Virus record (IMG/VR): IMGVR_UViG_3300021964_000012
Coordinates: 248,001 to 312,000 of that record
Reading direction: 5' to 3' (one strand)
Length of the DNA stretch: 64,000 nt
This document shows, piece after piece, positions 9,853 through 36,663 of the stretch (the stretch's first letter is position 1; every line of letters begins with the position of its first letter). Both the position numbers and the translations under genes were made by a program. A model generated the notes under the pieces. That model did not search any database. It was not told the origin of the DNA and worked only from the letters and a program-made list of their open reading frames with translations.

Positions 9853-11982
9853 TTAACCTTTTGCGAGGTAAAGAATTCTTTCAAGCATTGGATCACGTTC
9901 TGCTTTGAGTGCTTCTTTGCCAGTGTCGATATCTTGTATTTCTGTCGTCACATGCTTCTTTTCAACAACCTGTCCACTAAGCCTACGCATATCTGACATT
10001 TGAGCATCTTCTATTATACCACCTAATGCTTTGATTCCTTTTTCGGCGAATTGTATAACCTCAGCTGGTTCTGCGTCGACTAAATCTCTGGCCATTTTAT
10101 ACACGTCTAATGTTACATCGTCGGCATTTGCATGCATGTCCTTAAAGTAGTCGCCCATTTCATCTAAGATATGATCATTGTCGGTAAAGTCATTTGTAGA
10201 CGCTTGGTCGTATAAGTGATTAAGGTCGCTAATCAATTCTCTTTTAAGTTCATCTGCACTCATGTAGTCGGTATCGTCTTCAGTCATGTCTTCGGAATCC
10301 AAATCGTCCTGGGCCATCATGTCAACTGGTTTTTCGTTGTCAGTTCCATCTTGGTCGTTTGGATTGACAAAACTGTCCATGCCCTCATATTGAGGTGCAA
10401 CTCTATCCATATAGTCAATCCGTACCCATTCAGCCAGATCATATTCTTCATGTAGTGCATCATAGTCTTCTTCAGCAACTGGTGTACCGTCGGTATACTT
10501 TATGCCATCTTCAAGAACAAAAATTAAATCATCAAAGTCCTGCATATCATATTCGATAGTGTCTTGGTCTATTTCTTTGCCTTTGAAAATAATTTTATCG
10601 CTGTAGCCTTCTTCAATGTCTGAACCACCAGCAGTTTTCACTACATCTTGTCCGCCCATGCCCATTTCTAAACTGCGTTGCTTGCCTGCGGCTGCATTGG
10701 CCTGTCCTTGTTCATATCCACTTGCTGGTTCTTCTTGTGTAGGTGATTCACTTACGTTAACATCTATGTCAACACCAAGTTCCTGAGCACGTGCCTTTAC
10801 TAATTCTCTACAATCTGCATCTGGATCTTTGTCTGCTAGTTCACCAATGTCATCAAACAAACTGTCATCGCCAATCAAGTCATAAAGTTGTTCTGAAGCA
10901 TACTCGCCATCAGGTCCACATGGTAGAGGCTTTGACATAAGCTCTTGTAGCCTTGCCATGTCTTCTGCAGTTTCTGGCAATGCCCATGTACCTTCCATTA
11001 TTTGGTCGGTCCAGTTTTCAAATTGGTTTGCTTCTTTCATTGTGCTTTCCTTTATTTTTGCTAGTATAGGCAATGCTTCTTCGATACGGCTATCAACTGC
11101 ACTGTTTACAAATACTTCTCTTACACTTTCGATTGTTTCGTCTAATTCTGTTGCTACTGCTGGATCATATGTGGCAAATATTTCTTTGTATCCACGTTTG
11201 CCAATCATCTTCTTGGCTTTGCGTTTTAGATCTGCATAATGCTTTACTGCATCTTCTACTATGCCCAATGCTTGTTCGTTTTGTGCAAATGCATTACTGC
11301 GACTTGCTCTTACAAACTTTCCTAGTGTTTTTATTTCATTTATGGTTTCGCTAATGTACTGTCCAAATGCATCATATGGTGTACCGCCTTCGCTTACGTG
11401 ACGTGCCATTGCTTTAGCACCAGCAATACTTTCAAAAGGCATGCGAAATCTTTCACCTTGTGCATTTTCAACAAATAGTGCCGCAATGTTTCTGAAGCGT
11501 TGCTCACCTTCACCAATAGCTCGTGAATGTTGTATCACTACTTTTGCTTTGCCTGGCTGGTTGCTATAGCTCTTGCTTTTACCTTGAGCTTTCCATGCTT
11601 CCATAATAAGGCTTTCGCTTATGTCTGCCATGCTGGCCATTTGATACTTCAGTTTGTTCATGTTGTTCAAACTGAATGTAAGCAGGTTGCGTTTTGCAGT
11701 TTGTCTAAGCATTGCAAGAAAATCATACCAGTCACCTTTATCGCCAGGATCCATACCTTTGCCTAAGTTGTCACCATAGTAGACTTCTAAGTCATTGTCT
11801 CCATTTATTAATACTACAACTGTTCCGTATTCATTTCCGTTAACAGAAAAATTGAAACTAAACAAATCCGCTTCTCTCGGATTTACTGTAGGTTTACCCA
11901 TTGAATCCAAGCTCTTAGGATCTAAGTCTCTAGTAACTAACAAATCATAAATTTGTTGTGATGCTGTGTTTTCTTGTGCCAT
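9853..11982 (-). CDS. Large acidic protein, probable internal head/core protein
   Basis: 709 aa, D/E-rich C-terminal half, late motif 5 nt before ATG, directly downstream of terminase. Confidence 0.55.
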   Translation of the reverse strand: MAQENTASQQIYDLLVTRDLDPKSLDSMGKPTVNPREADLFSFNFSVNGNEYGTVVVLINGDNDLEVYYGDNLGKGMDPGDKGDWYDFLAMLRQTAKRNLLTFSLNNMNKLKYQMASMADISESLIMEAWKAQGKSKSYSNQPGKAKVVIQHSRAIGEGEQRFRNIAALFVENAQGERFRMPFESIAGAKAMARHVSEGGTPYDAFGQYISETINEIKTLGKFVRASRSNAFAQNEQALGIVEDAVKHYADLKRKAKKMIGKRGYKEIFATYDPAVATELDETIESVREVFVNSAVDSRIEEALPILAKIKESTMKEANQFENWTDQIMEGTWALPETAEDMARLQELMSKPLPCGPDGEYASEQLYDLIGDDSLFDDIGELADKDPDADCRELVKARAQELGVDIDVNVSESPTQEEPASGYEQGQANAAAGKQRSLEMGMGGQDVVKTAGGSDIEEGYSDKIIFKGKEIDQDTIEYDMQDFDDLIFVLEDGIKYTDGTPVAEEDYDALHEEYDLAEWVRIDYMDRVAPQYEGMDSFVNPNDQDGTDNEKPVDMMAQDDLDSEDMTEDDTDYMSADELKRELISDLNHLYDQASTNDFTDNDHILDEMGDYFKDMHANADDVTLDVYKMARDLVDAEPAEVIQFAEKGIKALGGIIEDAQMSDMRRLSGQVVEKKHVTTEIQDIDTGKEALKAERDPMLERILYLAKG

Positions 11983-14794: not shown

Positions 14795-14928
14795 ATGGAC
14801 TTTGGAGAACGGTTTTTTATTTTGTTATTTGATTTTGGTTGTAGATACTCAGCTGGTAAAGGAGCAACCTTGGGTGTTGGCTTTGGTTTTGGTTTTTCAA
14901 GTCCGCCAAAATTTATGCCTGTAATCAT
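14791..14928 (-). CDS. Unannotated 45-aa Lys/Pro-rich peptide
   Basis: MITGINFGGLEKPKPKPTPKVAPLPAEYLQPKSNNKIKNRSPKSI; ATGA overlap with the SNase stop; fills the gap up to the radical SAM gene. Confidence 0.55.
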   Translation of the reverse strand: MITGINFGGLEKPKPKPTPKVAPLPAEYLQPKSNNKIKNRSPKSI

Positions 14929-15365
14929 GTTACTACGCCATCTTCAAGCAACTTAACTCGATTGGCTAGGTGTGCTTTTTGTACGTCTTCTTTGTTCTGT
15001 CCATGATAAGGTACTGCGTGTCCTTCGCTTACAAGAATTTCAGTAAGCATACGCCATGTATCTGTAGCACCGTCGTACACACTAAAGTCGCCTAAGATAC
15101 GTCCAAACTTGCCTTTCATATCTTCGCCGTTTTTGTTTATTTGTGTTTTGAGAACGCAGGTTTTCCCTAGTAGTTGTTTTACTCTTGCTTTGGCGGCAAG
15201 CCCAAACTTTTTTTCTTCTTTGTCTCTTGTTCTTGATTCTGGTGTGTCTATGCCCATTATACGAACACGCTCATCTGATAGCACTATGCCAAATCCTAAG
15301 TCGATATCTACATCAACTGTGTCACCATCTACAACTTTTATTACTGTTGCTCTATACTCATACAT
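14925..15365 (-). CDS. Staphylococcal nuclease (SNase/thermonuclease)-like protein
   Basis: VVDGDTV, RVRIMGIDTPE, GKFGRILG catalytic motifs; no signal peptide. Confidence 0.85.
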   Translation of the reverse strand: MYEYRATVIKVVDGDTVDVDIDLGFGIVLSDERVRIMGIDTPESRTRDKEEKKFGLAAKARVKQLLGKTCVLKTQINKNGEDMKGKFGRILGDFSVYDGATDTWRMLTEILVSEGHAVPYHGQNKEDVQKAHLANRVKLLEDGVVT

Positions 15366-15371
15366 ATTATG

Positions 15372-15393
15372 CTCCTGTTATAGGAGTATTTAT
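15372..15393 (-). promoter_or_regulatory. Late promoter with an SD-sequestering mini-hairpin
   Basis: ATAAATA-CTCCT-ATAAC-AGGAG-CATAAT-ATG; CTCCT can pair with the AGGAG Shine-Dalgarno. Confidence 0.5.
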
Positions 15394-24750: not shown

Positions 24751-25368
24751 TTAGCCAGTTACAACGTCACCCAGTGTTCTTCCTACTGTAGATCCAATTC
24801 CTGTTCCAAGTGGTGTCTGTACTGCGTTGTCATAACGTAATGAGCATTCAATTGTTACAGGATCGTTTGATGCATAGTCTAAGTCACCATAGTTAGCACT
24901 TACTAAAAAGCAACCATATAGTTCCCATGTTTCAAGTACGTTAGGTGTGCTTGTTCCGTTACCACCATCTAGTACTTCACAACGTGTAACAAACTTATAG
25001 TCAATACCTGAACTTGCACTTGCTTGTTCTAGTGTATCCATTTGCTTTTGAATTTGCTCACCAACTAATCTACTAACATTTCCACCAGCATCATCTCTGA
25101 ATGTTGCTGATACAGCGTCCCATGTTTGACGTCCAGCAAGATAAATTCTACTGTTGTAAATTGGTACTTCAATTTCTTCAAAGTTTATAGTAGGTCTAGT
25201 AAAAGTCATTACCTGTTTGGTAAGTTCTGTTCTAGGTGTAGACACTCCCATGTTTTCAAATACCACCCGGTAGCGATATTTTAGTTTTGGCATTAACAGT
25301 CCTTGAGTTGGACTGGATTGGTCTGACGCCAATGGTACTGTCATTCTTGTTAGCGATGATACGGCCAT
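24751..25368 (-). CDS. gp19: Tail tube protein, gp19-like
   Basis: RPTINFEEIEVP..YLAGRQTW, WELYGCFL..YGDLDY..VTIECSLRYD; follows the sheath. Confidence 0.85.
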   Translation of the reverse strand: MAVSSLTRMTVPLASDQSSPTQGLLMPKLKYRYRVVFENMGVSTPRTELTKQVMTFTRPTINFEEIEVPIYNSRIYLAGRQTWDAVSATFRDDAGGNVSRLVGEQIQKQMDTLEQASASSGIDYKFVTRCEVLDGGNGTSTPNVLETWELYGCFLVSANYGDLDYASNDPVTIECSLRYDNAVQTPLGTGIGSTVGRTLGDVVTG

Positions 25369-29222: not shown

Positions 29223-29810
29223 ACTTTTTAAATCATCTACGGTACTATCATTGTGTAAGATAGTATCAAATCTAGTATTCACATCAATCCATTTGTACTC
29301 ACTTTCGTGTACATCAATACCACTCATTAGATTGCTTGTTTTAGGATTATTATTATCAAAAATAGCTCTGGCAAACCACTCAGGATCTTTGCCTCTTTTT
29401 ACTTGCCAAATTTTGCCGCCAAGTTTGCGTATCATATTTTGCTCGTTACGAAAACGCACATCAGGCACTATATAATCTCCTGGATGGTCTATCAAATATT
29501 TTTTTAAAAGACTTACCCATACGCCATTGTAAAACCCGTCTCGCATACATTCAGTACCAAATTCTTGTAGCACTATACGAGGTGTAATTGTTCTGCCTGT
29601 TTCAGCAGTCCAAAATTCGTCTGCTTGTTCACGCCACTGACGACTTTCTTCGGTATCGCCTTCCAGCATTGCTCTATCCCAGCCAAAGATAGTGGCTACA
29701 CCATCTTTTAGTTTATCAGCAAAACTAATTTTTTTGTATCCTTGCTCTACCAGTATATCAGCAACTGTTCCTTTGCCAGAACCAATTAATCCGCATATTC
29801 CTATTATCAT
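29187..29810 (-). CDS. gp1: Deoxynucleoside monophosphate kinase, T4 gp1-like
   Basis: GICGLIGSGKGTVA P-loop, SFADKLK, PRIVLQEFGTE, VPDVRFRNE, HESE. Confidence 0.9.
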   Translation of the reverse strand: MIIGICGLIGSGKGTVADILVEQGYKKISFADKLKDGVATIFGWDRAMLEGDTEESRQWREQADEFWTAETGRTITPRIVLQEFGTECMRDGFYNGVWVSLLKKYLIDHPGDYIVPDVRFRNEQNMIRKLGGKIWQVKRGKDPEWFARAIFDNNNPKTSNLMSGIDVHESEYKWIDVNTRFDTILHNDSTVDDLKSLVLDQISNTPR

Positions 29811-30328
29811 TTAAGTCCAGTAACTTTTAGATGTTTTATTGTTTGTTGTAGCAAATCTATTTGTCTTCTACAATCTTCGAGTGCATGATGACTTGCACGT
29901 GGCTTCGGCAAATCTGGGTACAAACTATATACAGTTCGTGCATCTCTGACATTCCAAAATTGCCACGGTATAGGCAAGCCTAATTGTTTCATTGCGTTTT
30001 CTAGTATAACCATATCAAATGTTGTACCATTTGCCCATGTGAGATTGCAGTGAAAACATATCTTGCTTAGTTCTTCTAATGCCTGTTTTAGTGGTATTCT
30101 ACCTTCTTCTGAGAATGCTTCATTTTGTGCTTCTTGTGGCTGAGTTGCCCACCATTCTACTGTGGCATCATCAACTTCTCTGTCAGGTTGACTGTCAACA
30201 TCAACTCTTGCATAGTAATCTTGTTTATGGTAACCTATACTGAAAGGATCAAAGGTTTGTGCGGCTATTGTAAGAATACAAGCATCTGGACCTGTACCTA
30301 CAGTTTCTATATCAATCATAATATCCAT
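29807..30328 (-). CDS. DEDDh 3'-5' exonuclease (Rv2179c-like)
   Basis: IMIDIETVG, WANGTTFDMVIL, RDART, HHALEDC. Confidence 0.85.
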   Translation of the reverse strand: MDIMIDIETVGTGPDACILTIAAQTFDPFSIGYHKQDYYARVDVDSQPDREVDDATVEWWATQPQEAQNEAFSEEGRIPLKQALEELSKICFHCNLTWANGTTFDMVILENAMKQLGLPIPWQFWNVRDARTVYSLYPDLPKPRASHHALEDCRRQIDLLQQTIKHLKVTGLK

Positions 30329-30334
30329 ACTATC

Positions 30335-30362
30335 ATTATAACAGTGAATGAAACTATGTCAA
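30335..30362 (-). promoter_or_regulatory. Consensus sigma70 promoter giving a leaderless mRNA
   Basis: TTGACA-N16-TATAAT with extended TGn; 6 nt to ATG 30328, no SD. Confidence 0.75.
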
Positions 30363-30363
30363 C

Positions 30364-30759
30364 CTATTTTCTTGGTTTTACTGTTTTCTTTGTACCTACT
30401 GTGCCTTTAAGACTCGTTTTTGGCGGTTTGTATGCTTTTTGTACTTTTCCACCTGATGATACTGTTTGCTTACGTATTTTATTAAGCATACCTAACAGTT
30501 TACTTGCTGGATTTACACGTTTTGTTTTTTTGGCTTTGCGAGCAGCCTGTTTGCTTTTGGTTTTACGAGTCACTTTCATTTGTGCTCGGCGCTTTTGATC
30601 TATTGGTGCATCGCAATCTTTGGCATTGCCAACAACCCGTCCACGTCTTGCACCACTGGTACAACGCCATTTGGTTTTGAGCTTGTTGCCTTTTCGTGAG
30701 AACACCATTTCGTGCTCATTGACAATCTCAGGTTTGGAAACAAACTCCTCAACACGCAT
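30364..30759 (-). CDS. Basic hypothetical protein (start revised to ATG 30759)
   Basis: TAATG overlap with the gp13 stop; starts MRVEEFVSK; K/R-rich. Confidence 0.6.
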   Translation of the reverse strand: MRVEEFVSKPEIVNEHEMVFSRKGNKLKTKWRCTSGARRGRVVGNAKDCDAPIDQKRRAQMKVTRKTKSKQAARKAKKTKRVNPASKLLGMLNKIRKQTVSSGGKVQKAYKPPKTSLKGTVGTKKTVKPRK

Positions 30760-31532
30760 TAGCCAATTACCCAAGTAAGTGGTTGCGATCCATCAACATA
30801 GTTTTTAAGTTCTTCAATCTTGGCATCCATAATAGCAGAACCTTCTGCTTTCATCTGTGCACCGTTCAAAGCAGTACCACCTTGCGGGCCTGCAATAGTA
30901 GCAAACTTTTCTCTAGCTTCTCCAATAATCAGTTTACAGTTTCCAATCATGTAGTCTTTTATCCACTGTGATGTAGAAAAGTCAGTTAATAGTTGTACCT
31001 CAGGACGTAGATTATAGCACCAAAGCAGAACTGTTTCTCCTGAACCTTTTATGTCACGCATTAGTGTAATTTGTTTTGTTGCACTATTGAAATTGTAATT
31101 TAAAAAACCACCAAACATTTTTGCAGTTAGTTCTACATACTGACTATAAAAATCATAGGTAGCAAGACCACCCATCTGATTGCCATTAAGTAAATAGGTG
31201 TTTAGTGCCGCCGAACTAAAAGGTTCAAATGCTGATCCTTCTCCGCCATTGCTAAATCCAATTGTACGTCGAAACACCTGCCTAACGGTCATGATTTCGC
31301 TTGGCAATGTGTATATGTTTGTGTCTTCTCTAAGAGTGAGAAAATTATAACTTTCTTCAAATGCATTTTCTGCCCTTTGTCGATAGACACCAATAGCTCT
31401 TTGATAAGCACTTTCATAATGACTTGCATCAAGTTCAGTATCAATTATGCCTTCGCCTAATTGTAACTTGATGTAATCAAATACTTCTTGCTTTTTTGTT
31501 TCTAATGTTTGATCAAGTGTTTCAGTTGCCAT
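30759..31532 (-). CDS. gp13: Neck protein, gp13-like
   Basis: YIKLQLG..IDTELD, WIKDYMIG..K..GEAREKF, GPQGGTALNG..MKAEG. Confidence 0.8.
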   Translation of the reverse strand: MATETLDQTLETKKQEVFDYIKLQLGEGIIDTELDASHYESAYQRAIGVYRQRAENAFEESYNFLTLREDTNIYTLPSEIMTVRQVFRRTIGFSNGGEGSAFEPFSSAALNTYLLNGNQMGGLATYDFYSQYVELTAKMFGGFLNYNFNSATKQITLMRDIKGSGETVLLWCYNLRPEVQLLTDFSTSQWIKDYMIGNCKLIIGEAREKFATIAGPQGGTALNGAQMKAEGSAIMDAKIEELKNYVDGSQPLTWVIG

Positions 31533-31557
31533 AATACCATCCTATGACAGTATTTAT
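31533..31557 (-). promoter_or_regulatory. Late promoter overlapping an RBS-sequestering hairpin (gp13)
   Basis: ATAAATA overlaps the 5' arm of AATACTGTC-ATAG-GATGGTATT, which ends next to the ATG. Confidence 0.6.
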
Positions 31558-31562
31558 GCGGA

Positions 31563-32825
31563 TCACCAGGCCTTTAGTATAACCACATGCTCGTTGCCTC
31601 TACCATTGTATTTTATTTCAGTGGCTTTTATATTGGCAAATTGTTTTCTGTTGTTAGGTTTTCCAGCATTCATAAGTTCTTTTAATTGTTCTGCTGGTTT
31701 ACGCAGTGTTTTTTGTACACTTTTGTTTGGATCAAAACCAATCACACTATTGCTTTTAATGCTGTAGGTCTTGATTGTTTCGTCAGCAATGACATATATT
31801 AGTTTACGTGTTTTAGTATTGTAAAGCCATGCTTCAGAACCGTGAACTAATTTTTCTGGCGAAACACTAGTCAGTTCAAGCTCATCAAAACGTCTAAGAT
31901 ACTTGAACTTACGTACTAATTGTGCAGGTGTTTTTTGTTTGGCAACTCTAGGAGCTCTATCTGCTTTTTTAACCTGTACATAACTTGCACAGTCAGCAAC
32001 TGCACGTTCTAAAAACTTTTGCATTGCACGTATCTGTAACTTGCCTAAATGGCTATATCCTTCTTCTAGTTGTGCTATCATATCAAGTTCTTGTTCTGAC
32101 ATTTTAGCCTGTTCTTTTTTACTAGGCGGGTTCATAAGTTCATTGATTTCACTAAGTTGTGCTTTGAGTGGATCAGCAATAATATCTATTGTTTGCGGCG
32201 GACATCCTTCATCACGTAACAATTTCATAAGACTGTACTTATCAGGATCCTTACAGTCGTTTGCCATAAACTGATCAACCAGTTCATGCACTGCACCTTC
32301 GATATCCATTGTTTTATCACGCATGTTTTCTTGTATGGTTTTGCGTTCGACTTTTGGTTTTGTATTATCTACAACAAGTTTTGGTACAGGTGGTGTACGT
32401 TCTAGGGCTTGTGCAATAGTTTTTTTAACATAATCGCTAGTAGGATGTACATCACCAATTGTGCCTGGCAGTGTTTGCCAGTATGAGTCGTGCTCAGGAT
32501 GTACGTCTGGCATACCTTGACGTAAACATCTTGCATAGATACTTGCATATACCATTCCATTGTGTCCATGACGTTTCATAGTAGCAATATCTTCTTTGCT
32601 GTAGTTGTTTTCTTTCATCCATGCTAACAGGTCTGGAAACAGTTCAACAGGCTTACGTTCTTGGTAATACCAATCAACTGAAACCATCTTGTGCTTATGG
32701 TAGGCTTGTCCGCTCATTTGCAATGCAGTTGACCAATCAGGGTCTAATGCTTTACTTCGTTGTTTTCTTACTACCGGCTTTTTCTTACGAGTGCCTGGCT
32801 TCATTAAACTTTTGCCTTTTGCCAT
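31563..32825 (-). CDS. Early hypothetical protein (420 aa)
   Basis: Basic N-terminus; C-terminal WLYNTKTRKL...GFD..S.QKTLRKP; sigma70-like promoter and GGAG SD upstream. Confidence 0.7.
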   Translation of the reverse strand: MAKGKSLMKPGTRKKKPVVRKQRSKALDPDWSTALQMSGQAYHKHKMVSVDWYYQERKPVELFPDLLAWMKENNYSKEDIATMKRHGHNGMVYASIYARCLRQGMPDVHPEHDSYWQTLPGTIGDVHPTSDYVKKTIAQALERTPPVPKLVVDNTKPKVERKTIQENMRDKTMDIEGAVHELVDQFMANDCKDPDKYSLMKLLRDEGCPPQTIDIIADPLKAQLSEINELMNPPSKKEQAKMSEQELDMIAQLEEGYSHLGKLQIRAMQKFLERAVADCASYVQVKKADRAPRVAKQKTPAQLVRKFKYLRRFDELELTSVSPEKLVHGSEAWLYNTKTRKLIYVIADETIKTYSIKSNSVIGFDPNKSVQKTLRKPAEQLKELMNAGKPNNRKQFANIKATEIKYNGRGNEHVVILKAW

Positions 32826-32856
32826 CGAATTCTCCTAAAGTTCTAACTGTTTACAG

Positions 32857-32884
32857 AGTATAACATGTATGTAGTTAGTGTCAA
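32857..32884 (-). promoter_or_regulatory. sigma70-like early promoter (leftward)
   Basis: TTGACA-N16-TATACT with extended TGn. Confidence 0.7.
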
Positions 32885-32917
32885 CCACGATTATTTTATT
32901 CTTTTCAAATAAAAAGG

Positions 32918-32945
32918 TTGACTTATACTGTGACTGTGTTATTAT
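32918..32945 (+). promoter_or_regulatory. sigma70-like early promoter (rightward)
   Basis: TTGACT-N16-TATTAT with extended TGn and an upstream A-tract. Confidence 0.7.
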
Positions 32946-32975
32946 GTATGTACAGTTAGAAAAAAGGAACAGTAT

Positions 32976-33203
32976 ATGAAGAAGAAAATACAAATTATTG
33001 GAATAGTAAAAGAAGATAGTGTTAATGTAGAATACGAAACTGGCAAGCACGATAGTATTAGTAGTGCAGAAGCTGAATTGCTTACTATGATGGACTACAC
33101 AAAATCAGGTCCGTTTCCGGTTAATAATATCAAACTGGTAAAAACTATATACAACTTTGTAGAATGCTATGAAGATGAATTTAAGGATTGGAAGTATGCT
33201 TAA
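32976..33203 (+). CDS. Small early hypothetical protein
   Basis: 75 aa, AAGGA SD. Confidence 0.65.
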   Translation: MKKKIQIIGIVKEDSVNVEYETGKHDSISSAEAELLTMMDYTKSGPFPVNNIKLVKTIYNFVECYEDEFKDWKYA

Positions 33204-33357
33204 TGAAACATTACAACTATACGAACGTCGTATAGACAACTGCTGGCAAGCCGCAGAATTTTGTGCTGATGGCACATGGGGTAGAGAATATTGGACTCAG
33301 AATGCAATGTATCTTCTTCGACAACTAAACCGTGAACTTAATGGAGAAAACAAATGA
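33196..33357 (+). CDS. Small early hypothetical protein (start probably ATG 33196)
   Basis: MLNETLQLYERRIDNCWQAAEFC...; overlaps both neighbours by a few nt. Confidence 0.55.
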   Translation: MLNETLQLYERRIDNCWQAAEFCADGTWGREYWTQNAMYLLRQLNRELNGENK

Positions 33358-33575
33358 AATTTATGTTGATTTCAATGATGTTAGCAAACCCAATGGTATA
33401 TGCTAACGAAAAAACCTGTAATGTTGCCGCTGATGCACTAAAAAATGTCGATATAGAAGCAGTGTGTATTCCAGCAGGAGAACAAGCAAAAAATCCAGGC
33501 GATGCAATGCTAGAAGGTTTTATGAAGCTTATTGATCAAATGGAAAAAATGCATAATCAAAGTATGTCAAAATGA
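33354..33575 (+). CDS. Small protein with signal-peptide-like N-terminus
   Basis: MKFMLISMMLANPMVYA then two Cys; GGAG SD; ATGA overlap. Confidence 0.6.
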   Translation: MKFMLISMMLANPMVYANEKTCNVAADALKNVDIEAVCIPAGEQAKNPGDAMLEGFMKLIDQMEKMHNQSMSK

Positions 33576-33868
33576 ATGCTACTTTACTAGGATTACAATT
33601 TGATACCAGCAAGTATCATAAAGGCATACAACTTGTATTAGACTTTAAGGATTATGAGTTGAGTGTTGTACAACATGACGGAAGTTATGGTGGCACTCAA
33701 GGTTTGTTTGAAATTATGGTAAGTGATGAAAATGGAGGAGTTGAACTTCCTGGTATCACAGAGCCAGGCGATACTGTTAAAGGCTGGTTGACTTTAGAAG
33801 ATGTTAGTTCTATATGCAAGAAGATGACTTCAATCACTGGCAACGATCCAGTGAAGGTTGCTATCTAG
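33572..33868 (+). CDS. Small early phage hypothetical protein
   Basis: YELSVV..SYGG..GLFEIMV...VKGWLT..DV motif common in lytic phage early genes. Confidence 0.65.
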   Translation: MNATLLGLQFDTSKYHKGIQLVLDFKDYELSVVQHDGSYGGTQGLFEIMVSDENGGVELPGITEPGDTVKGWLTLEDVSSICKKMTSITGNDPVKVAI

Positions 33869-33872
33869 GACC

Positions 33873-33900
33873 ATAAATACAGTAATAAGGATTACTGTAT
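33873..33900 (+). promoter_or_regulatory. Late promoter overlapping an RBS-sequestering hairpin (gp14)
   Basis: ATAAATA 33873..33879; perfect 10-bp stem ATACAGTAAT-AAGG-ATTACTGTAT covering the SD and the AT of ATG. Confidence 0.7.
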
Positions 33901-35257
33901 GCCCAGATTAAGTTTATATCGCCCAAATCGACAAAACGATTACAAGTTTATTGACCGCACTGTTATGGAAATGTATCAAGTTGGCGGTGTTGACATGTTT
34001 GTACACAAGTATCTCGGTCCTCAAGTTACTGGTGATGACAGTTCAAGTGTCAGCGGTGGCACACAGGATGCAACACAACCAGCCTATAGTACCGAATCAC
34101 CTTTGTTCATTGAAGATTTATTTTTGCTGGAAAACAGAGATCGCAAGTACGATGACGATGTTTATCAAATGCGAGGTGTTTACAATTCACAGGACATAGA
34201 TTTTGATCTAAGTCAATTTGGATTGTTTTTAAACAACGATACACTGTTTATTACTTTCCATTATAACTTTATGATAGATACAATTGGTCGTAAACTTATG
34301 AGTGGAGATGTACTTGAATTACCAAATCTTAAAGACTATAACCCTCTTGATAGTAGTATTGCTCGAGCTATACCTAAATACTATGTAATACAAGACGCGG
34401 CGTTTGCAAGTGAAGGATTTTCGCAAACATGGTTGCCGCATTTATGGCGTGTCAAAGCTACACCACTGGTAAGTGCTCAAGAATACAACGACATACTTAA
34501 AAAACCATTTGCAGAAAAAAATATTTGGGATAATGGAAATTATTATCCAAAAGGCAGTACTGTTTTAAGTGGTGATACCTATTACAAAGCAATCAAAGAC
34601 GTAGACCCTGGTGTTGAAATCACCGATACTACGCATTGGGAAGAATTTGAACCCACAAGCGAACGTGACACATTTGGCACAGTACAAAAAGACCTAGAGC
34701 TTAATGATGCTATTTTACAACAGGCAGAATATGAGGTTCCACTCAGTGGTTACGACTCTGTAAAATTTTACATTGTTCCAACAAACGAAGACGGTTCACC
34801 AGCAGATCCAAACAGTTACACTGTTGATAATAATGGTATTACAGTTGATACAACAAATGTAGATGTTGATGGACAACCACAATCTCCAAGAGCAAACGGT
34901 TACACACTGGGTTATCTAACCGGCGATGGCTTAGCACCAAATGGATTACCAGTTACACCAGGTATTAGTTTTCCAAGCAACCCACAAGAAGGCGACTTTG
35001 CACTACGATTAGACTATTATCCAAACAGACTTTTTCGCTATAGTGGTACACGATGGATTAAGTACGAGGACGATGTGAGAACCAACTTGACACCAGGCGA
35101 TATTACAAAGACAGTTACAGGATACGGAAACGTAACTTCACAAACACAAAGAAGTAGTTTTGTAAACAACACAAACCAAACTGCTACTGAAGATCGTGGT
35201 AATATTCCAGAGCGTCAACCATTGAGTAAGTTGCTTAAACCACAGGCTGATAACTAA
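33899..35257 (+). CDS. gp14: Neck protein, gp14-like, with insertions
   Basis: MPRLSLY...YQVGG..MFVHKY, FLENRDRKYD, DLSQFGLFL, GRKLMSGDVLELP; precedes gp15. Confidence 0.7.
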   Translation: MPRLSLYRPNRQNDYKFIDRTVMEMYQVGGVDMFVHKYLGPQVTGDDSSSVSGGTQDATQPAYSTESPLFIEDLFLLENRDRKYDDDVYQMRGVYNSQDIDFDLSQFGLFLNNDTLFITFHYNFMIDTIGRKLMSGDVLELPNLKDYNPLDSSIARAIPKYYVIQDAAFASEGFSQTWLPHLWRVKATPLVSAQEYNDILKKPFAEKNIWDNGNYYPKGSTVLSGDTYYKAIKDVDPGVEITDTTHWEEFEPTSERDTFGTVQKDLELNDAILQQAEYEVPLSGYDSVKFYIVPTNEDGSPADPNSYTVDNNGITVDTTNVDVDGQPQSPRANGYTLGYLTGDGLAPNGLPVTPGISFPSNPQEGDFALRLDYYPNRLFRYSGTRWIKYEDDVRTNLTPGDITKTVTGYGNVTSQTQRSSFVNNTNQTATEDRGNIPERQPLSKLLKPQADN

Positions 35258-36663
35258 TGCAACAATTTTTTTATGACGAACAGATACGTCGATTTCTACT
35301 GCAAGTTACCAGGGTATTTTCAAACTTTCAAGTAGAATACGGTTATGAAACCGACAATCCTCAAAAGAAAGCTCTGTATAGAGTTCCGGTTCGTTACGGT
35401 GATGCAACAAGACAAGCTCAAACAATCATACAACAGAACAGTGCCAACAGTTTACCCAGCACACCTCTTATGACATTCCATGTAACAAACCTAAATTATG
35501 CAAGAGATAGAATACAGGAACCATATTTTGTTGAAAAACAAAATGTAAGACAACGTTATTGGGATACAGAAAGTGAATCCTATGAAACAACACAAGGAAC
35601 AGCTTTTACAATAGAAAAGCTGATGCCGGTTCCTTATGATTTGGAAATCAATGTTGATATATGGACATCAAATACCAATCAAAAATTACAAATACTTGAA
35701 CAAATATTAACACTTTTTAATCCAGGGTTAGAAATTCAAAGCACAGATAACTTTATAGACTGGACAAGTTTAAGTGTTATGTATCTCGAACAGGTTACAT
35801 GGAGTTCAAGAAATATACCTCAAGGAACTGACGATCCAATTGATATTGCAACATTGCGTTTTGTGATGCCTATATGGATAAGTCCGCCGGCAAAAGTTAA
35901 AAAACTTGGAGTTGTTGAAAAGATTATTGCTAGTGTATACGACGGTTCTGGTGATATGAATGAAGCAATATATGATAGTGATTTATTGCTAGGCACAAGA
36001 CAAAAATTTACACCTTTTAATTATCAAACTCTTTTGCTTGGAAACAAACTACAGGTACTTGAACCCCAAGCAGTTGTGACTAACAATAGCGGAGTGCAAG
36101 TGCCAAGTGCTCCTCCAAGCAATCTACTTTGGCATACTGTAATTGATCTATATGGAAGCCTAAGAGCTGGTATAAGTCAAATTAGATTAGACAATCCATA
36201 TGATGATACACAGATTATTGGTACAGTAGCATATGATCCTAGTGATGATAGATTTTTATTGTTTACTGTGGATACAGACACTATTCCACAAAACACACTT
36301 GATCCTATAAATGCCATAGTAAACCCACAGGCAAAAGGCCCTGATACAACAAACGGTCTACCAGCGGCATCAGAAGGACAAAGGTATTTGTTTATAAATG
36401 ATACTGGAAGCGATAGTGCAGAAGATCCTGGTTTTGCCGAAGCATGGCGTGGTACTGATGGATCAACTTTGATTGCAAATACAAACGATATTGTAGAATA
36501 TGATGGCGTACGTTGGAATATTGCATTTGACTCAAGCAACGAAAGCAATTTACAATATGTAACAAACCTTACAACCAGTGTGCAATACAGATGGGCAGAC
36601 AATCAGTGGCTAAAAAGCTATGAAGGACTTTATCCTGAAGGCGAATGGAGCATTGTGCTTTGA
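35257..36663 (+). CDS. gp15: Tail terminator/sheath stabiliser, gp15-like, with C-terminal extension
   Basis: FFYDEQIRRF, VPVRYG, MPVPYDL, QILEQILTLFNP. Confidence 0.8.
   Translation: MQQFFYDEQIRRFLLQVTRVFSNFQVEYGYETDNPQKKALYRVPVRYGDATRQAQTIIQQNSANSLPSTPLMTFHVTNLNYARDRIQEPYFVEKQNVRQRYWDTESESYETTQGTAFTIEKLMPVPYDLEINVDIWTSNTNQKLQILEQILTLFNPGLEIQSTDNFIDWTSLSVMYLEQVTWSSRNIPQGTDDPIDIATLRFVMPIWISPPAKVKKLGVVEKIIASVYDGSGDMNEAIYDSDLLLGTRQKFTPFNYQTLLLGNKLQVLEPQAVVTNNSGVQVPSAPPSNLLWHTVIDLYGSLRAGISQIRLDNPYDDTQIIGTVAYDPSDDRFLLFTVDTDTIPQNTLDPINAIVNPQAKGPDTTNGLPAASEGQRYLFINDTGSDSAEDPGFAEAWRGTDGSTLIANTNDIVEYDGVRWNIAFDSSNESNLQYVTNLTTSVQYRWADNQWLKSYEGLYPEGEWSIVL

What the first reader, a model, noticed from the sequence alone, without database searches (positions are those of the whole stretch)
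31533..33900. Both neck genes flanking the early cassette carry RBS-sequestering hairpins that late initiation removes
Seen: divergent sigma70 promoters at 32857..32945 point toward gp13 (minus) and gp14 (plus) with no terminator visible in between. gp14 has a perfect 10-bp stem ATACAGTAAT-AAGG-ATTACTGTAT; gp13 has a 9-bp stem AATACTGTC-ATAG-GATGGTATT. In both, ATAAATA overlaps the 5' arm, and a start 6 nt downstream (33885 and 31545) drops nearly all or all of that arm. Established: T4 genes e, soc, 49 and I-TevI use this trick to block translation from early read-through RNA. Inference: a mirror-symmetric timing switch applied to core neck genes.
Basis: partly seen in the sequence, partly recalled or inferred. 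Interest (0 to 1): 0.7.

Follow-up and report, generated by a model that had tools for sequence, protein, structure and literature searches.

The report
Promoter-embedded RBS hairpins gate neck genes
In this 328-kb marine jumbo phage, two virion genes at the head-tail junction each carry a conserved RNA hairpin that hides their ribosome-binding site on read-through RNA from neighbouring early genes; a T4-style late promoter built into the hairpin's first arm should make RNA without that arm, which is a known T4 trick found here in a distant lineage.

Summary
The window lies in a complete 328,292-bp jumbo-phage genome from an estuary metagenome, related only at protein level to Atu_ph07, PA5oct and Rak2-like phages.

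Both hairpins fold far better than shuffles (-9.8 and -8.9 kcal/mol; 0 of 200 shuffles as good). RNA starting 6-8 nt after the motif is unstructured.

TAAATA behaves as a gp55-type late promoter. The genome encodes a gp55-like sigma factor. ATAAATA is depleted 3.5-fold overall yet precedes tail tube, sheath and portal genes.

Both divergent sigma70-like promoters belong to a recurrent phage class and are conserved in relatives. No terminator-like site follows either one.

In 80 related contigs the gp13 hairpin persists with at least 12 different arm sequences. Its 5' arm never ends more than 8 nt after the motif.

The gp14 hairpin occurs only where co-directional small ORFs lie upstream. Elsewhere gp14 has TAAATA-N7-ATG, with no Shine-Dalgarno sequence and no hairpin. 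Outgroups with adjacent neck genes have no hairpin.

No start site, timing or translation data exist. "gp14" is named by position only. This is a new member of a known kind.

The parts
30759..31532 (-). gp13-like neck protein (head-tail adaptor Ad2), 257 aa
   Evidence: phrog_211, E 5e-29. Matches PDB 'Neck protein gp13', E 9e-4. The start is conserved in relatives.
31533..31554 (-). gp13 leader hairpin: 5' arm 31554-31546, loop ATAG 31545-31542, 3' arm 31541-31533. The Shine-Dalgarno AGGA (31543-31540) spans the loop and the 3' arm, and the stem ends at the base before the ATG.
   Evidence: The isolated hairpin gives -8.9 kcal/mol, z -3.4. It is kept in the minimum-energy and centroid folds of the 76-nt context. 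It is conserved, with covariation, in relatives.
31551..31558 (-). Late-promoter-like motif CATAAATA (core TAAATA) in the 30-nt spacer between the 420-aa gene and gp13. Predicted late start at 31545-31543.
   Evidence: TAAATA is invariant in 34 distinct leaders. The spacing was calibrated.
31563..32825 (-). Conserved 420-aa protein of unknown function (phrog_11903), transcribed from the sigma70-like promoter and lying directly upstream of gp13 on the same strand.
   Evidence: The AlphaFold2 model has pLDDT 84 and no PDB analogue.
32857..32884 (-). Sigma70-like promoter TTGACA-16-TATACT with a TG extension, 31 nt upstream of the 420-aa gene's ATG.
   Evidence: Conserved in relatives. Near-consensus TTGACC-17-TATAAT in distant relatives.
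32918..32945 (+). Sigma70-like promoter TTGACT-16-TATTAT with a TG extension, 30 nt upstream of the first small ORF.
32976..33868 (+). Four small ORFs (75, 62, 73 and 98 aa; 32976-33203, 33169-33357, 33354-33575, 33572-33868). They match no family and vary among relatives.
33872..33879 (+). Late-promoter-like motif CATAAATA. Predicted late start at 33885-33887.
33877..33900 (+). gp14 leader hairpin: 5' arm 33877-33886, loop AAGG 33887-33890 (the Shine-Dalgarno sequence), 3' arm 33891-33900, which includes the A and U of the start codon.
   Evidence: It gives -9.8 kcal/mol, z -3.8. Variants in relatives are listed.
33899..35257 (+). 452-aa virion structural protein in the gp14 position (phrog_11591), followed by gp15.
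   Evidence: No detectable similarity to T4 gp14. The structure model was unusable.
35257..36663 (+). gp15-like tail sheath stabiliser, 468 aa.
   Evidence: PF16724, E 4e-25. phrog_11196 and phrog_227.

Best explanation
This is a translational timing gate of the T4 e/soc/49/I-TevI type, present twice around one divergent early promoter pair.

Host sigma70 RNA polymerase starts at 32857-32884 on the - strand and at 32918-32945 on the + strand. It transcribes the 420-aa gene leftward and four small ORFs rightward. With no terminator in the way, it runs on into gp13 and into the gp14-position gene.

On these long RNAs a 9-10-bp hairpin pairs the spacer and the start codon, leaving the Shine-Dalgarno sequence in a 4-nt loop. 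Initiation of translation is therefore poor.

Later, RNA polymerase carrying the phage's gp55-like sigma factor recognises TAAATA, which overlaps the 5' arm. It starts 5-8 nt downstream, at about 33885 and 31545. The late RNA lacks the 5' arm, has an open 14-nt leader with the Shine-Dalgarno sequence, and is translated.

Shown here: the anatomy, the fold statistics, the presence of the late sigma gene, the genome-wide distribution of the motif, conservation and covariation in relatives, and the match between hairpin presence and gene context.

Inferred: the temporal classes of the promoters, read-through, the start sites, and the effect on translation.
For: 1. Structure. The local hairpins give -9.8 and -8.9 kcal/mol, with 0 of 200 shuffles as good. 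RNAs starting at +6 or +8 after the motif fold at 0 to -1 kcal/mol, and 180-200 of 200 shuffles fold at least as well.

2. Late promoter.
- A gp55-like sigma factor is encoded (phrog_12791, E 1e-73; T4 gp55 matches at E 1.5e-5).
- ATAAATA occurs 54 times against 191 expected. Most copies lie 15-30 nt upstream of the ATG of long ORFs.
- Motif-led genes in the window include tail tube, tail sheath and portal genes.
- The same motif and a gp55-like gene are reported in the jumbo phages CBB and GAP32, which appear among the window's protein-level relatives (PMC5259590).

3. Start-site calibration.
- In T4 the box spans -13 to -6 (PMC2988020).
- In this genome TAAATA-Nk-ATG peaks at k = 4-5 without a Shine-Dalgarno sequence, then shows a gap up to k = 14.
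- In 17 related leader sequences gp14 has TAAATA-N6-8-ATG (N7 in 14), with no Shine-Dalgarno sequence.
- Both patterns place the start 5-8 nt after the motif.

4. Early promoters. Both fit a recurrent class, TTGACA-16/17-(TGn)TAnnnT about 30 nt before an ATG, and both are conserved in relatives. No terminator-like site follows.

5. gp13 hairpin in relatives.
- Of 28 distinct leaders with the 420-aa gene directly upstream, 26 fold at -4 kcal/mol or better, and 20 reach p <= 0.05 against shuffles.
- At least 12 different arm sequences occur.
- The 5' arm always starts between -3 and +3 and ends by +8, even when the leader is 22-27 nt long.
- For the covariance-model alignment of one sub-family, 98.6% of cells pair and 3 of 6 pairs changed on both sides. 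The covariation score is 0.288 against 0.152 in shuffles (0 of 500 as high), and slid controls show none.
- In L059 the motif sits in the loop of a 14-bp stem (-23.9 kcal/mol, z -5.9).

6. Natural contrast.
- The gp14 hairpin is present in all 21 architectures with co-directional small ORFs upstream. It is absent in the 17 architectures where gp14 abuts the divergent promoter; the one further case, L078, is an ORF-calling artefact.
- Atu_ph07 and Phosso have adjacent, divergent neck genes with back-to-back TAAATA motifs and no hairpin.

7. Strand. The two G-U pairs in the gp13 stem pair only in the sense-strand RNA.
Against: - No 5'-end, time-course or translation data exist.
- Metatranscriptome contigs are uninformative on start sites. 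They show only a step in depth, from 6 to 37, across 33876-33911 in one run, and a few contigs bridging the motif. These could be read-through RNA or DNA carry-over.
- Single-sequence significance is modest when only the upstream segment is shuffled (p 0.05 and 0.09), because AU-rich flanks often pair with AU-rich leaders.
- Stems of -9 to -10 kcal/mol are moderate, and the Shine-Dalgarno sequence sits in the loop rather than in the stem.
- The hairpin-bearing gp14 lineages form one clade, so that contrast amounts to few independent events.
- Genome-wide, ribosome-binding-site occlusion is only weakly higher when the nearest upstream promoter is sigma70-like (one-sided p 0.052).
- No gp45 homologue was found with the T4 query. 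This is uninformative either way, and gp33 was not searched.
Confidence: 0.7

Rival explanations
1. The hairpins mainly serve the upstream early messages. They would act as 3' stabilisers or processing sites for the 420-aa-gene mRNA and the small-ORF mRNA. Covering the neck genes' ribosome-binding sites would be incidental.
For: Each hairpin begins 8 nt after the stop codon of the upstream ORF. Hairpin presence tracks the presence of an upstream co-directional gene, and this rival predicts that too.
Against: The 3' arm always reaches the start codon and the loop always holds the Shine-Dalgarno sequence. The 5' arm is always tied to the TAAATA motif, never starting beyond +3 or ending beyond +8 after it. 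A mere 3' stabiliser needs neither constraint. There is no U-tract. The two roles are not exclusive.
Confidence: 0.1
2. The inverted repeats act in DNA, as palindromic operators over the late promoters for a dimeric repressor. This would resemble I-TevI autorepression at its own late promoter.
For: The gp14 repeat is a perfect 10-bp palindrome with a 4-bp spacer over the -10 box and the start site. I-TevI binds an operator that overlaps its late promoter (PMC2988022).
Against: Arm sequences are replaced wholesale among relatives while pairing is kept. The gp13 stem needs two G-U pairs, which are mismatches in DNA. The two repeats share little beyond the promoter's own ATAC-N-GT extension.
Confidence: 0.06
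3. The hairpins belong to the late mRNA itself, as 5'-terminal stem-loops that protect it from decay or present the Shine-Dalgarno sequence in a loop. The true late start would then lie upstream of the 5' arm.
For: 5'-terminal stem-loops stabilise bacterial and phage mRNAs (established knowledge). The Shine-Dalgarno sequence lies in the loop in most lineages.
Against: The 5' arm overlaps the invariant TAAATA box or begins at most 3 nt after it in every lineage. A start site cannot lie inside or upstream of its own -10 box. The leaderless-type spacings place starts 5-8 nt downstream. In L059 the whole 5' arm lies upstream of the box.
Confidence: 0.05
4. The stems are chance complementarity in AU-rich leaders and have no function.
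For: The 76-nt contexts fold no better than shuffles (z -0.5 and -0.3). Shuffling the upstream flank often gives 5-6 kcal/mol of occlusion.
Against: None of 200 shuffles matches either local hairpin. The structure persists through compensatory changes in lineages down to 64% gp13 identity. It is absent exactly where no upstream co-directional gene exists.
Confidence: 0.04

Closest known systems
T4 gene e (lysozyme) leader (PMC3014915)
   Same: Long early transcripts form a helix over the Shine-Dalgarno sequence and AUG. Late promoters (TATAAATA) lie in the DNA that encodes the 5' strand, so late RNA lacks that strand and is translated. The leader structure also recurs in close relatives.
   Different: Here the genes are head-tail junction proteins of a jumbo phage that is related to T4 only distantly. 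The conserved promoter core is TAAATA. The stems are shorter (9-10 bp), and the Shine-Dalgarno sequence lies in the loop. Nothing has been measured.
T4 soc, gene 49, I-TevI/II/III and segB; Aeh1 mobE (PMC3014915, PMC2988022)
   Same: They use the same promoter-in-hairpin logic for genes embedded in early or middle transcription units. soc is also a virion gene.
   Different: Most of those cases are nucleases or homing endonucleases whose early expression is harmful. Here two connector genes flank one divergent early promoter pair.
ATAAATA late-promoter motif and gp55-like sigma of the jumbo phages CBB and GAP32, which appear among the protein-level relatives (PMC5259590)
   Same: The same motif precedes structural genes, and a gp55-like sigma gene is present. 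No gp45 homologue was found in CBB or here; gp33 was reported missing in CBB and was not searched here.
   Different: That work reported promoters only, not leader hairpins or leaderless-type spacings.

Membership tests
T4-type translational occlusion hairpin with an embedded late promoter (e/soc/49/I-TevI class) | The Shine-Dalgarno sequence and/or AUG is held in a stable helix on transcripts that start upstream. | tested here: met
   Predicted folds give -9.8 and -8.9 kcal/mol. The stems are kept in the 76-nt contexts. Opening the ribosome-binding site costs 10.6 and 10.3 kcal/mol. All of this is in silico.
T4-type translational occlusion hairpin with an embedded late promoter (e/soc/49/I-TevI class) | A late promoter is placed so that late transcripts lack the 5' strand of the helix. 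| tested here: met
   TAAATA overlaps the 5' arm. A start 5-8 nt downstream leaves 0-3 nt of the arm. Short RNAs are unstructured. The start site itself is not mapped.
T4-type translational occlusion hairpin with an embedded late promoter (e/soc/49/I-TevI class) | Early or middle transcription reads through into the gene. | tested here: inconclusive
   Conserved sigma70-like promoters lie upstream and no terminator-like site intervenes. RNA-library contigs bridge 33842-34014 and 33870-33930, but DNA carry-over cannot be excluded.
T4-type translational occlusion hairpin with an embedded late promoter (e/soc/49/I-TevI class) | Translation is low from long RNA and high from late RNA. | not testable with these tools
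   This needs reporter fusions, toeprinting or ribosome profiling.
gp55-dependent T4-type late promoter | The phage encodes a gp55-family sigma factor. | tested here: met
   L082:1387-2313(-), 308 aa. It matches phrog_12791 (E 1e-73) and phrog_234 (E 1e-23). T4 gp55 matches it at E 1.5e-5.
gp55-dependent T4-type late promoter | A TATAAATA-like box without a -35 element lies upstream of late and structural genes. | tested here: met
   The core TAAATA is invariant in relatives. The first two bases of the T4 octamer are not conserved (C/G/T then A/C/G).
gp55-dependent T4-type late promoter | Transcription starts about 6 nt after the box. | tested here: inconclusive
   There is only indirect evidence: leaderless-type spacings of N4-5 in this genome and N7 in relatives.
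gp55-dependent T4-type late promoter | Co-activation by gp33 and the gp45 sliding clamp. | tested here: inconclusive
   The T4 gp45 query found nothing in the genome, and an empty answer is uninformative. gp33 was not searched.
T4 neck proteins gp13 and gp14 | Sequence homology to T4 gp13. | tested here: met
   phrog_211 (Ad2), E 5e-29. PDB 'Neck protein gp13', E 9e-4.
T4 neck proteins gp13 and gp14 | Sequence homology to T4 gp14 (head closure Hc2). | tested here: not met
   hhalign probability 0.4%. The PHROG families differ: 11591 here, against 679/460 for T4 gp14. The structure model had pLDDT 44 and was unusable. Only the position between gp13 and gp15 supports the name.
Intrinsic terminator | A GC-rich stem followed by a U-tract. 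| tested here: not met
   Neither hairpin is called by the scan, and no T-run follows either one.

The most novel reading that the evidence does not exclude
Late genes of this marine jumbo-phage clade may use two interchangeable ways to tie translation to the late start site.

1. Hairpins that sequester the ribosome-binding site and whose 5' arm is the late promoter.
2. Leaderless or near-leaderless late mRNAs (TAAATA-N4-8-ATG, with no Shine-Dalgarno sequence). These cannot be translated from read-through RNA at all.

gp14 switches between the two designs according to whether early ORFs were inserted upstream. The gene placed after the 420-aa gene in some lineages uses the leaderless design, and there the gp13 hairpin decays. 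Widespread leaderless translation of virion genes from gp55-type promoters has not, to my knowledge, been described.
Probability: 0.35. Interest if true: 0.6.

Novelty: new member of a known kind. Interest (0 to 1): 0.45.

Why it matters
If true, the T4 promoter-in-hairpin device is not a peculiarity of T-even lysis and nuclease genes. It would be an old, portable solution used wherever late genes sit downstream of early units in gp55-type phages, uncultured jumbo phages included.

It also gives an annotation rule. TAAATA followed by a stem whose loop holds the Shine-Dalgarno sequence marks a late gene that suffers early read-through.

The natural contrast among relatives supplies ready-made long, short and compensatory leader variants for reporter tests.

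The leaderless-type spacings offer a sequence-only estimate of late start sites in phages whose hosts are unknown.

Tried and rejected
- Near-identity DNA search of GenBank phages: no match. Only protein-level relatives were found.
- MAFFT plus RNAalifold on all 34 gp13 leaders: no consensus structure. The 3' arms were out of register. I replaced this with per-sequence folds and a covariance-model alignment of one sub-family. That alignment is fitted to the structure, so its counts lean towards it.
- Metatranscriptome contigs (two read-laying runs, 13 and 36): most are from relatives 90-95% alike. Contigs carry no direction and no 5' ends. No conclusion on start sites or timing is possible.
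- Genome-wide test that occlusion is stronger behind sigma70-like promoters: a trend only, p 0.052.
- Function of the 420-aa protein: no Pfam family. The model is confident (pLDDT 84). There is no PDB fold match, and the only matches are uncharacterised phage proteins.
- Identity of 'gp14': the profile comparison with T4 gp14 was negative and the structure model was too poor to search.
- T4 gp45 search in the genome: nothing found, which is uninformative.
- Tail-tube leader stem at 25368: not better than shuffles, so I do not count it as a case.
- L078, an apparent exception with co-directional ORFs upstream of gp14 but no hairpin: this is an ORF-calling artefact. The divergent sigma70 promoter abuts gp14 there as in the other distant relatives.
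Full report
WHAT IS THERE

The window is bases 248001-312000 of a single-contig 328,292-bp virus record with direct terminal repeats. Its GC content is 37.5%, and it was assembled from an estuary metagenome. No GenBank phage is similar at DNA level. At protein level the nearest isolates are the jumbo phages Atu_ph07, Phosso, PA5oct and the Rak2/CBB/GAP32 group, at 33-45% identity.

The locus reads as follows:
- gp13-like neck protein: 30759-31532, - strand. It matches phrog_211 and PDB 'Neck protein gp13'.
- A 420-aa protein of unknown function: 31563-32825, - strand.
- Two back-to-back sigma70-like promoters.
- Four small ORFs: 32976-33868, + strand.
- A 452-aa virion structural protein: 33899-35257, + strand.
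- gp15: 35257-36663, + strand, PF16724.

The 452-aa protein is 'gp14' by position only. A family profile does not align with T4 gp14, the PHROG families differ, and the structure model was too poor to use.

THE OBSERVATION

The gp14 stem has 10 Watson-Crick pairs. The Shine-Dalgarno AAGG lies in the loop, and the A and U of the start codon lie in the 3' arm.

The gp13 stem has 9 pairs, two of them G-U. AGGA spans the loop and the 3' arm.

CATAAATAC overlaps each 5' arm (5 copies in the window against 1.1 expected). The sixth base after each motif is an A, at 33885 and 31545.

Both sigma70-like promoters carry a 16-nt spacer and a TG extension. No terminator-like site lies between them and the neck genes.

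The hairpins alone fold at -9.8 and -8.9 kcal/mol, with z -3.8 and -3.4 and 0 of 200 shuffles as stable. RNAs that start at +6 or +8 fold at 0 to -1 kcal/mol, which is less than most shuffles.

IS TAAATA A LATE PROMOTER?

The genome encodes a 308-aa gp55-like sigma factor.

ATAAATA occurs 54 times where 191 are expected. Most copies lie 15-30 nt upstream of the ATG of a long ORF with a Shine-Dalgarno sequence. In the window these ORFs include tail tube, tail sheath and portal genes, a tail-fibre-like gene and other virion proteins.

The same motif and a gp55-like gene were described for CBB and GAP32 (PMC5259590).

In T4 the octamer spans -13 to -6 (PMC2988020).

Two internal calibrators agree with that spacing:
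- The histogram of TAAATA-Nk-ATG in this genome peaks at k = 4-5, at gene starts without a Shine-Dalgarno sequence. It then falls to near zero until k = 15.
- In 17 related leader sequences gp14 begins 6-8 nt after the motif (7 nt in 14 of them), with no Shine-Dalgarno sequence.

Starts therefore lie about 5-8 nt after the motif. That leaves 0-3 nt of the gp14 arm and 0-1 nt of the gp13 arm.

ARE THE UPSTREAM GENES EARLY?

This is inferred from promoters only.

TTGACA-16/17-(TGn)TAnnnT, about 30 nt before an ATG, recurs at least 20 times in the genome. Both promoters here fit that class. The divergent pair is conserved through the window's clade.

In distant relatives the 420-aa gene has a near-consensus TTGACC-17-TATAAT.

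COMPARATIVE EVIDENCE, gp13

Eighty IMG/VR contigs with gp13 identity of 64-100% keep the 420-aa gene directly upstream of gp13, and keep gp14 divergent. TAAATA is invariant in all 34 distinct gp13 leaders.

Of the 28 leaders with the 420-aa gene adjacent, 26 fold at -4 kcal/mol or better (median -6.8). Twenty beat 95% of shuffles.

The arms differ completely between lineages. Examples are ACTGTC/GATGGT, ACTGTAT/ACAGTAT, ACAAGAGCG/CGCTCTTGT, GGGGAC/GTCCCC, AGGGAC/GTCCCT, GGGAAC/GTTCCC, AGAGAAC/GTTCTCT and ATAGGAAC/GTTCCTAT.

The geometry is nevertheless constant:
- The 5' arm starts between -3 and +3 and ends by +8 after the motif, even in leaders of 22-27 nt.
- The loop holds GGA, AGGA or AAGG.
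- The 3' arm ends at or near the ATG.

A covariance-model alignment of the GGGAAC sub-family has 12 distinct sequences. In it 98.6% of cells pair, and 3 of 6 pairs changed on both sides. The covariation score is 0.288 against 0.152 in shuffles (0 of 500 as high), and slid controls show none. The alignment is fitted to the structure.

In L059 the motif lies in the loop of a 14-bp stem (-23.9 kcal/mol, z -5.9). This is the classical T4 gene e layout.

Where other genes were inserted between the 420-aa gene and gp13, the hairpin is absent or weak in L040, L062 and L069/70. The inserted gene there often has TAAATA-N5-ATG.

In Atu_ph07 and Phosso, gp13 and gp14 are adjacent and divergent with back-to-back TAAATA motifs. 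Neither leader folds better than chance.

COMPARATIVE EVIDENCE, gp14

All 21 architectures with co-directional small ORFs upstream (gp14 identity 72% or more) have a Shine-Dalgarno sequence, an 18-19-nt leader and a hairpin of -6.5 to -9.8 kcal/mol. The variants include a register shift (L024 and L031 types) and a compensated C/G insertion (L036: -11.5 kcal/mol, 1 of 200 shuffles as good).

In the 17 architectures where gp14 abuts the divergent sigma70 promoter there is no hairpin; L078, the one further case, is an ORF-calling artefact. These hairpin-bearing lineages form one clade, so the number of independent events is small.

MECHANISM AND RIVALS

The best explanation is the T4 e/soc/49/I-TevI device (PMC3014915; PMC2988022). 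Read-through RNA from the sigma70 units carries an occluded ribosome-binding site. The late promoter embedded in the 5' arm makes an open 14-nt leader.

- A role as a 5' stabiliser of the late mRNA is excluded by geometry, if TAAATA is the -10 box.
- A DNA operator is disfavoured by the wholesale replacement of arm sequences and by the G-U pairs.
- A role as a 3' stabiliser of the early messages cannot be excluded, and could coexist with the gate.
- Chance is excluded by conservation.

I put the main explanation at 0.7.

LIMITS

There are no start sites, no timing data and no translation data.

Metatranscriptome contigs show only a rise in depth from 6 to 37 across 33876-33911 in one run, and a few contigs crossing the motif.

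Within this genome the link between occlusion and an upstream sigma70-like promoter is a trend only (p 0.052). The four clearest cases do all lie behind such promoters: gp14, gp13, and the genes starting at genome positions 78238 and 174171.

NOVELTY

The mechanism is textbook for T4. New here are the lineage (uncultured marine jumbo phages), the target genes (head-tail junction proteins), the paired arrangement around one divergent promoter, and the comparative demonstration. The leaderless-type late genes are the more unusual lead.

Noticed in passing
window 11982 (709-aa virion protein, 9853-11982, -) and 58337 (71 aa, -); genome positions 1091, 18430, 203249, 60562, 242326, 313681, 122728: These are late genes with TAAATA-N4-5 (or N7)-ATG and no Shine-Dalgarno sequence. 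The spacing histogram is bimodal: a peak at 4-5, a gap at 6-14, then a broad range of 15-30. This suggests leaderless or near-leaderless late mRNAs. In 17 related leader sequences gp14 has the same design with N6-8 (N7 in 14).
   Followed up: partly
genome G000:C1 gene starts 78238 (-) and 174171 (-), outside the window: These are two further late genes with T4-e-type leaders. At 78238 the 5' arm lies upstream of TAAATA and the motif sits in the loop (-14.2 kcal/mol). At 174171 an arm upstream of the motif pairs with the start codon. Both lie behind sigma70-like promoters.
   Followed up: partly
window 14925-15365 (-), leader 15366-15393: An SNase-like nuclease (PF00565) is preceded by ATAAATA. 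The motif is followed at once by CTCCT, which pairs with the Shine-Dalgarno AGGAG (5 bp). The leader's minimum-energy fold, which also includes a second small stem, is -6 kcal/mol; 10 of 200 shuffles are as good. This is a weaker candidate for the same gate, on a nuclease as in T4.
   Followed up: partly
window 31563-32825 (-): The 420-aa protein has more than 3,500 metagenomic homologues and no Pfam family. Its AlphaFold2 model is confident (pLDDT 84): helical, with a C-terminal beta domain. It has no PDB fold match. It always sits between gp14 and gp13 under a near-consensus sigma70 promoter. Its function is unknown.
   Followed up: partly
window 30335-30362 (-): A perfect TTGACA-16-TATAAT promoter with a TG extension lies 6 nt before the exonuclease gene (29807-30328), directly after the gp13-o136 late unit. 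Early and late units therefore alternate on one strand, so read-through in both temporal directions is likely.
   Followed up: no
window 31474-31494 joined to 33934-33954 in a 6,534-nt contig of RNA run X16: A related phage in a marine metatranscriptome has the 5' ends of gp13 and gp14 only 99 letters apart. It therefore lacks the 420-aa gene and the small ORFs, as Atu_ph07 does.
   Followed up: no
L078, about 1079 (gp14 start): In this relative the conserved Met-Pro-Arg start of gp14 reads ATT-CCA-CGG, preceded by AGGAG at 7 nt. This is a possible ATT start codon or a sequencing error.
   Followed up: no
window 33886: Most relatives have G instead of T here. That opens the closing pair, giving a 9-bp stem with a 6-nt loop GAAGGA. 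The window and L007 have the 10-bp form.
   Followed up: yes
whole genome: ATAAATA is 3.5-fold under-represented (54 copies against 191 expected from base composition). This is consistent with selection against stray late promoters.
   Followed up: partly
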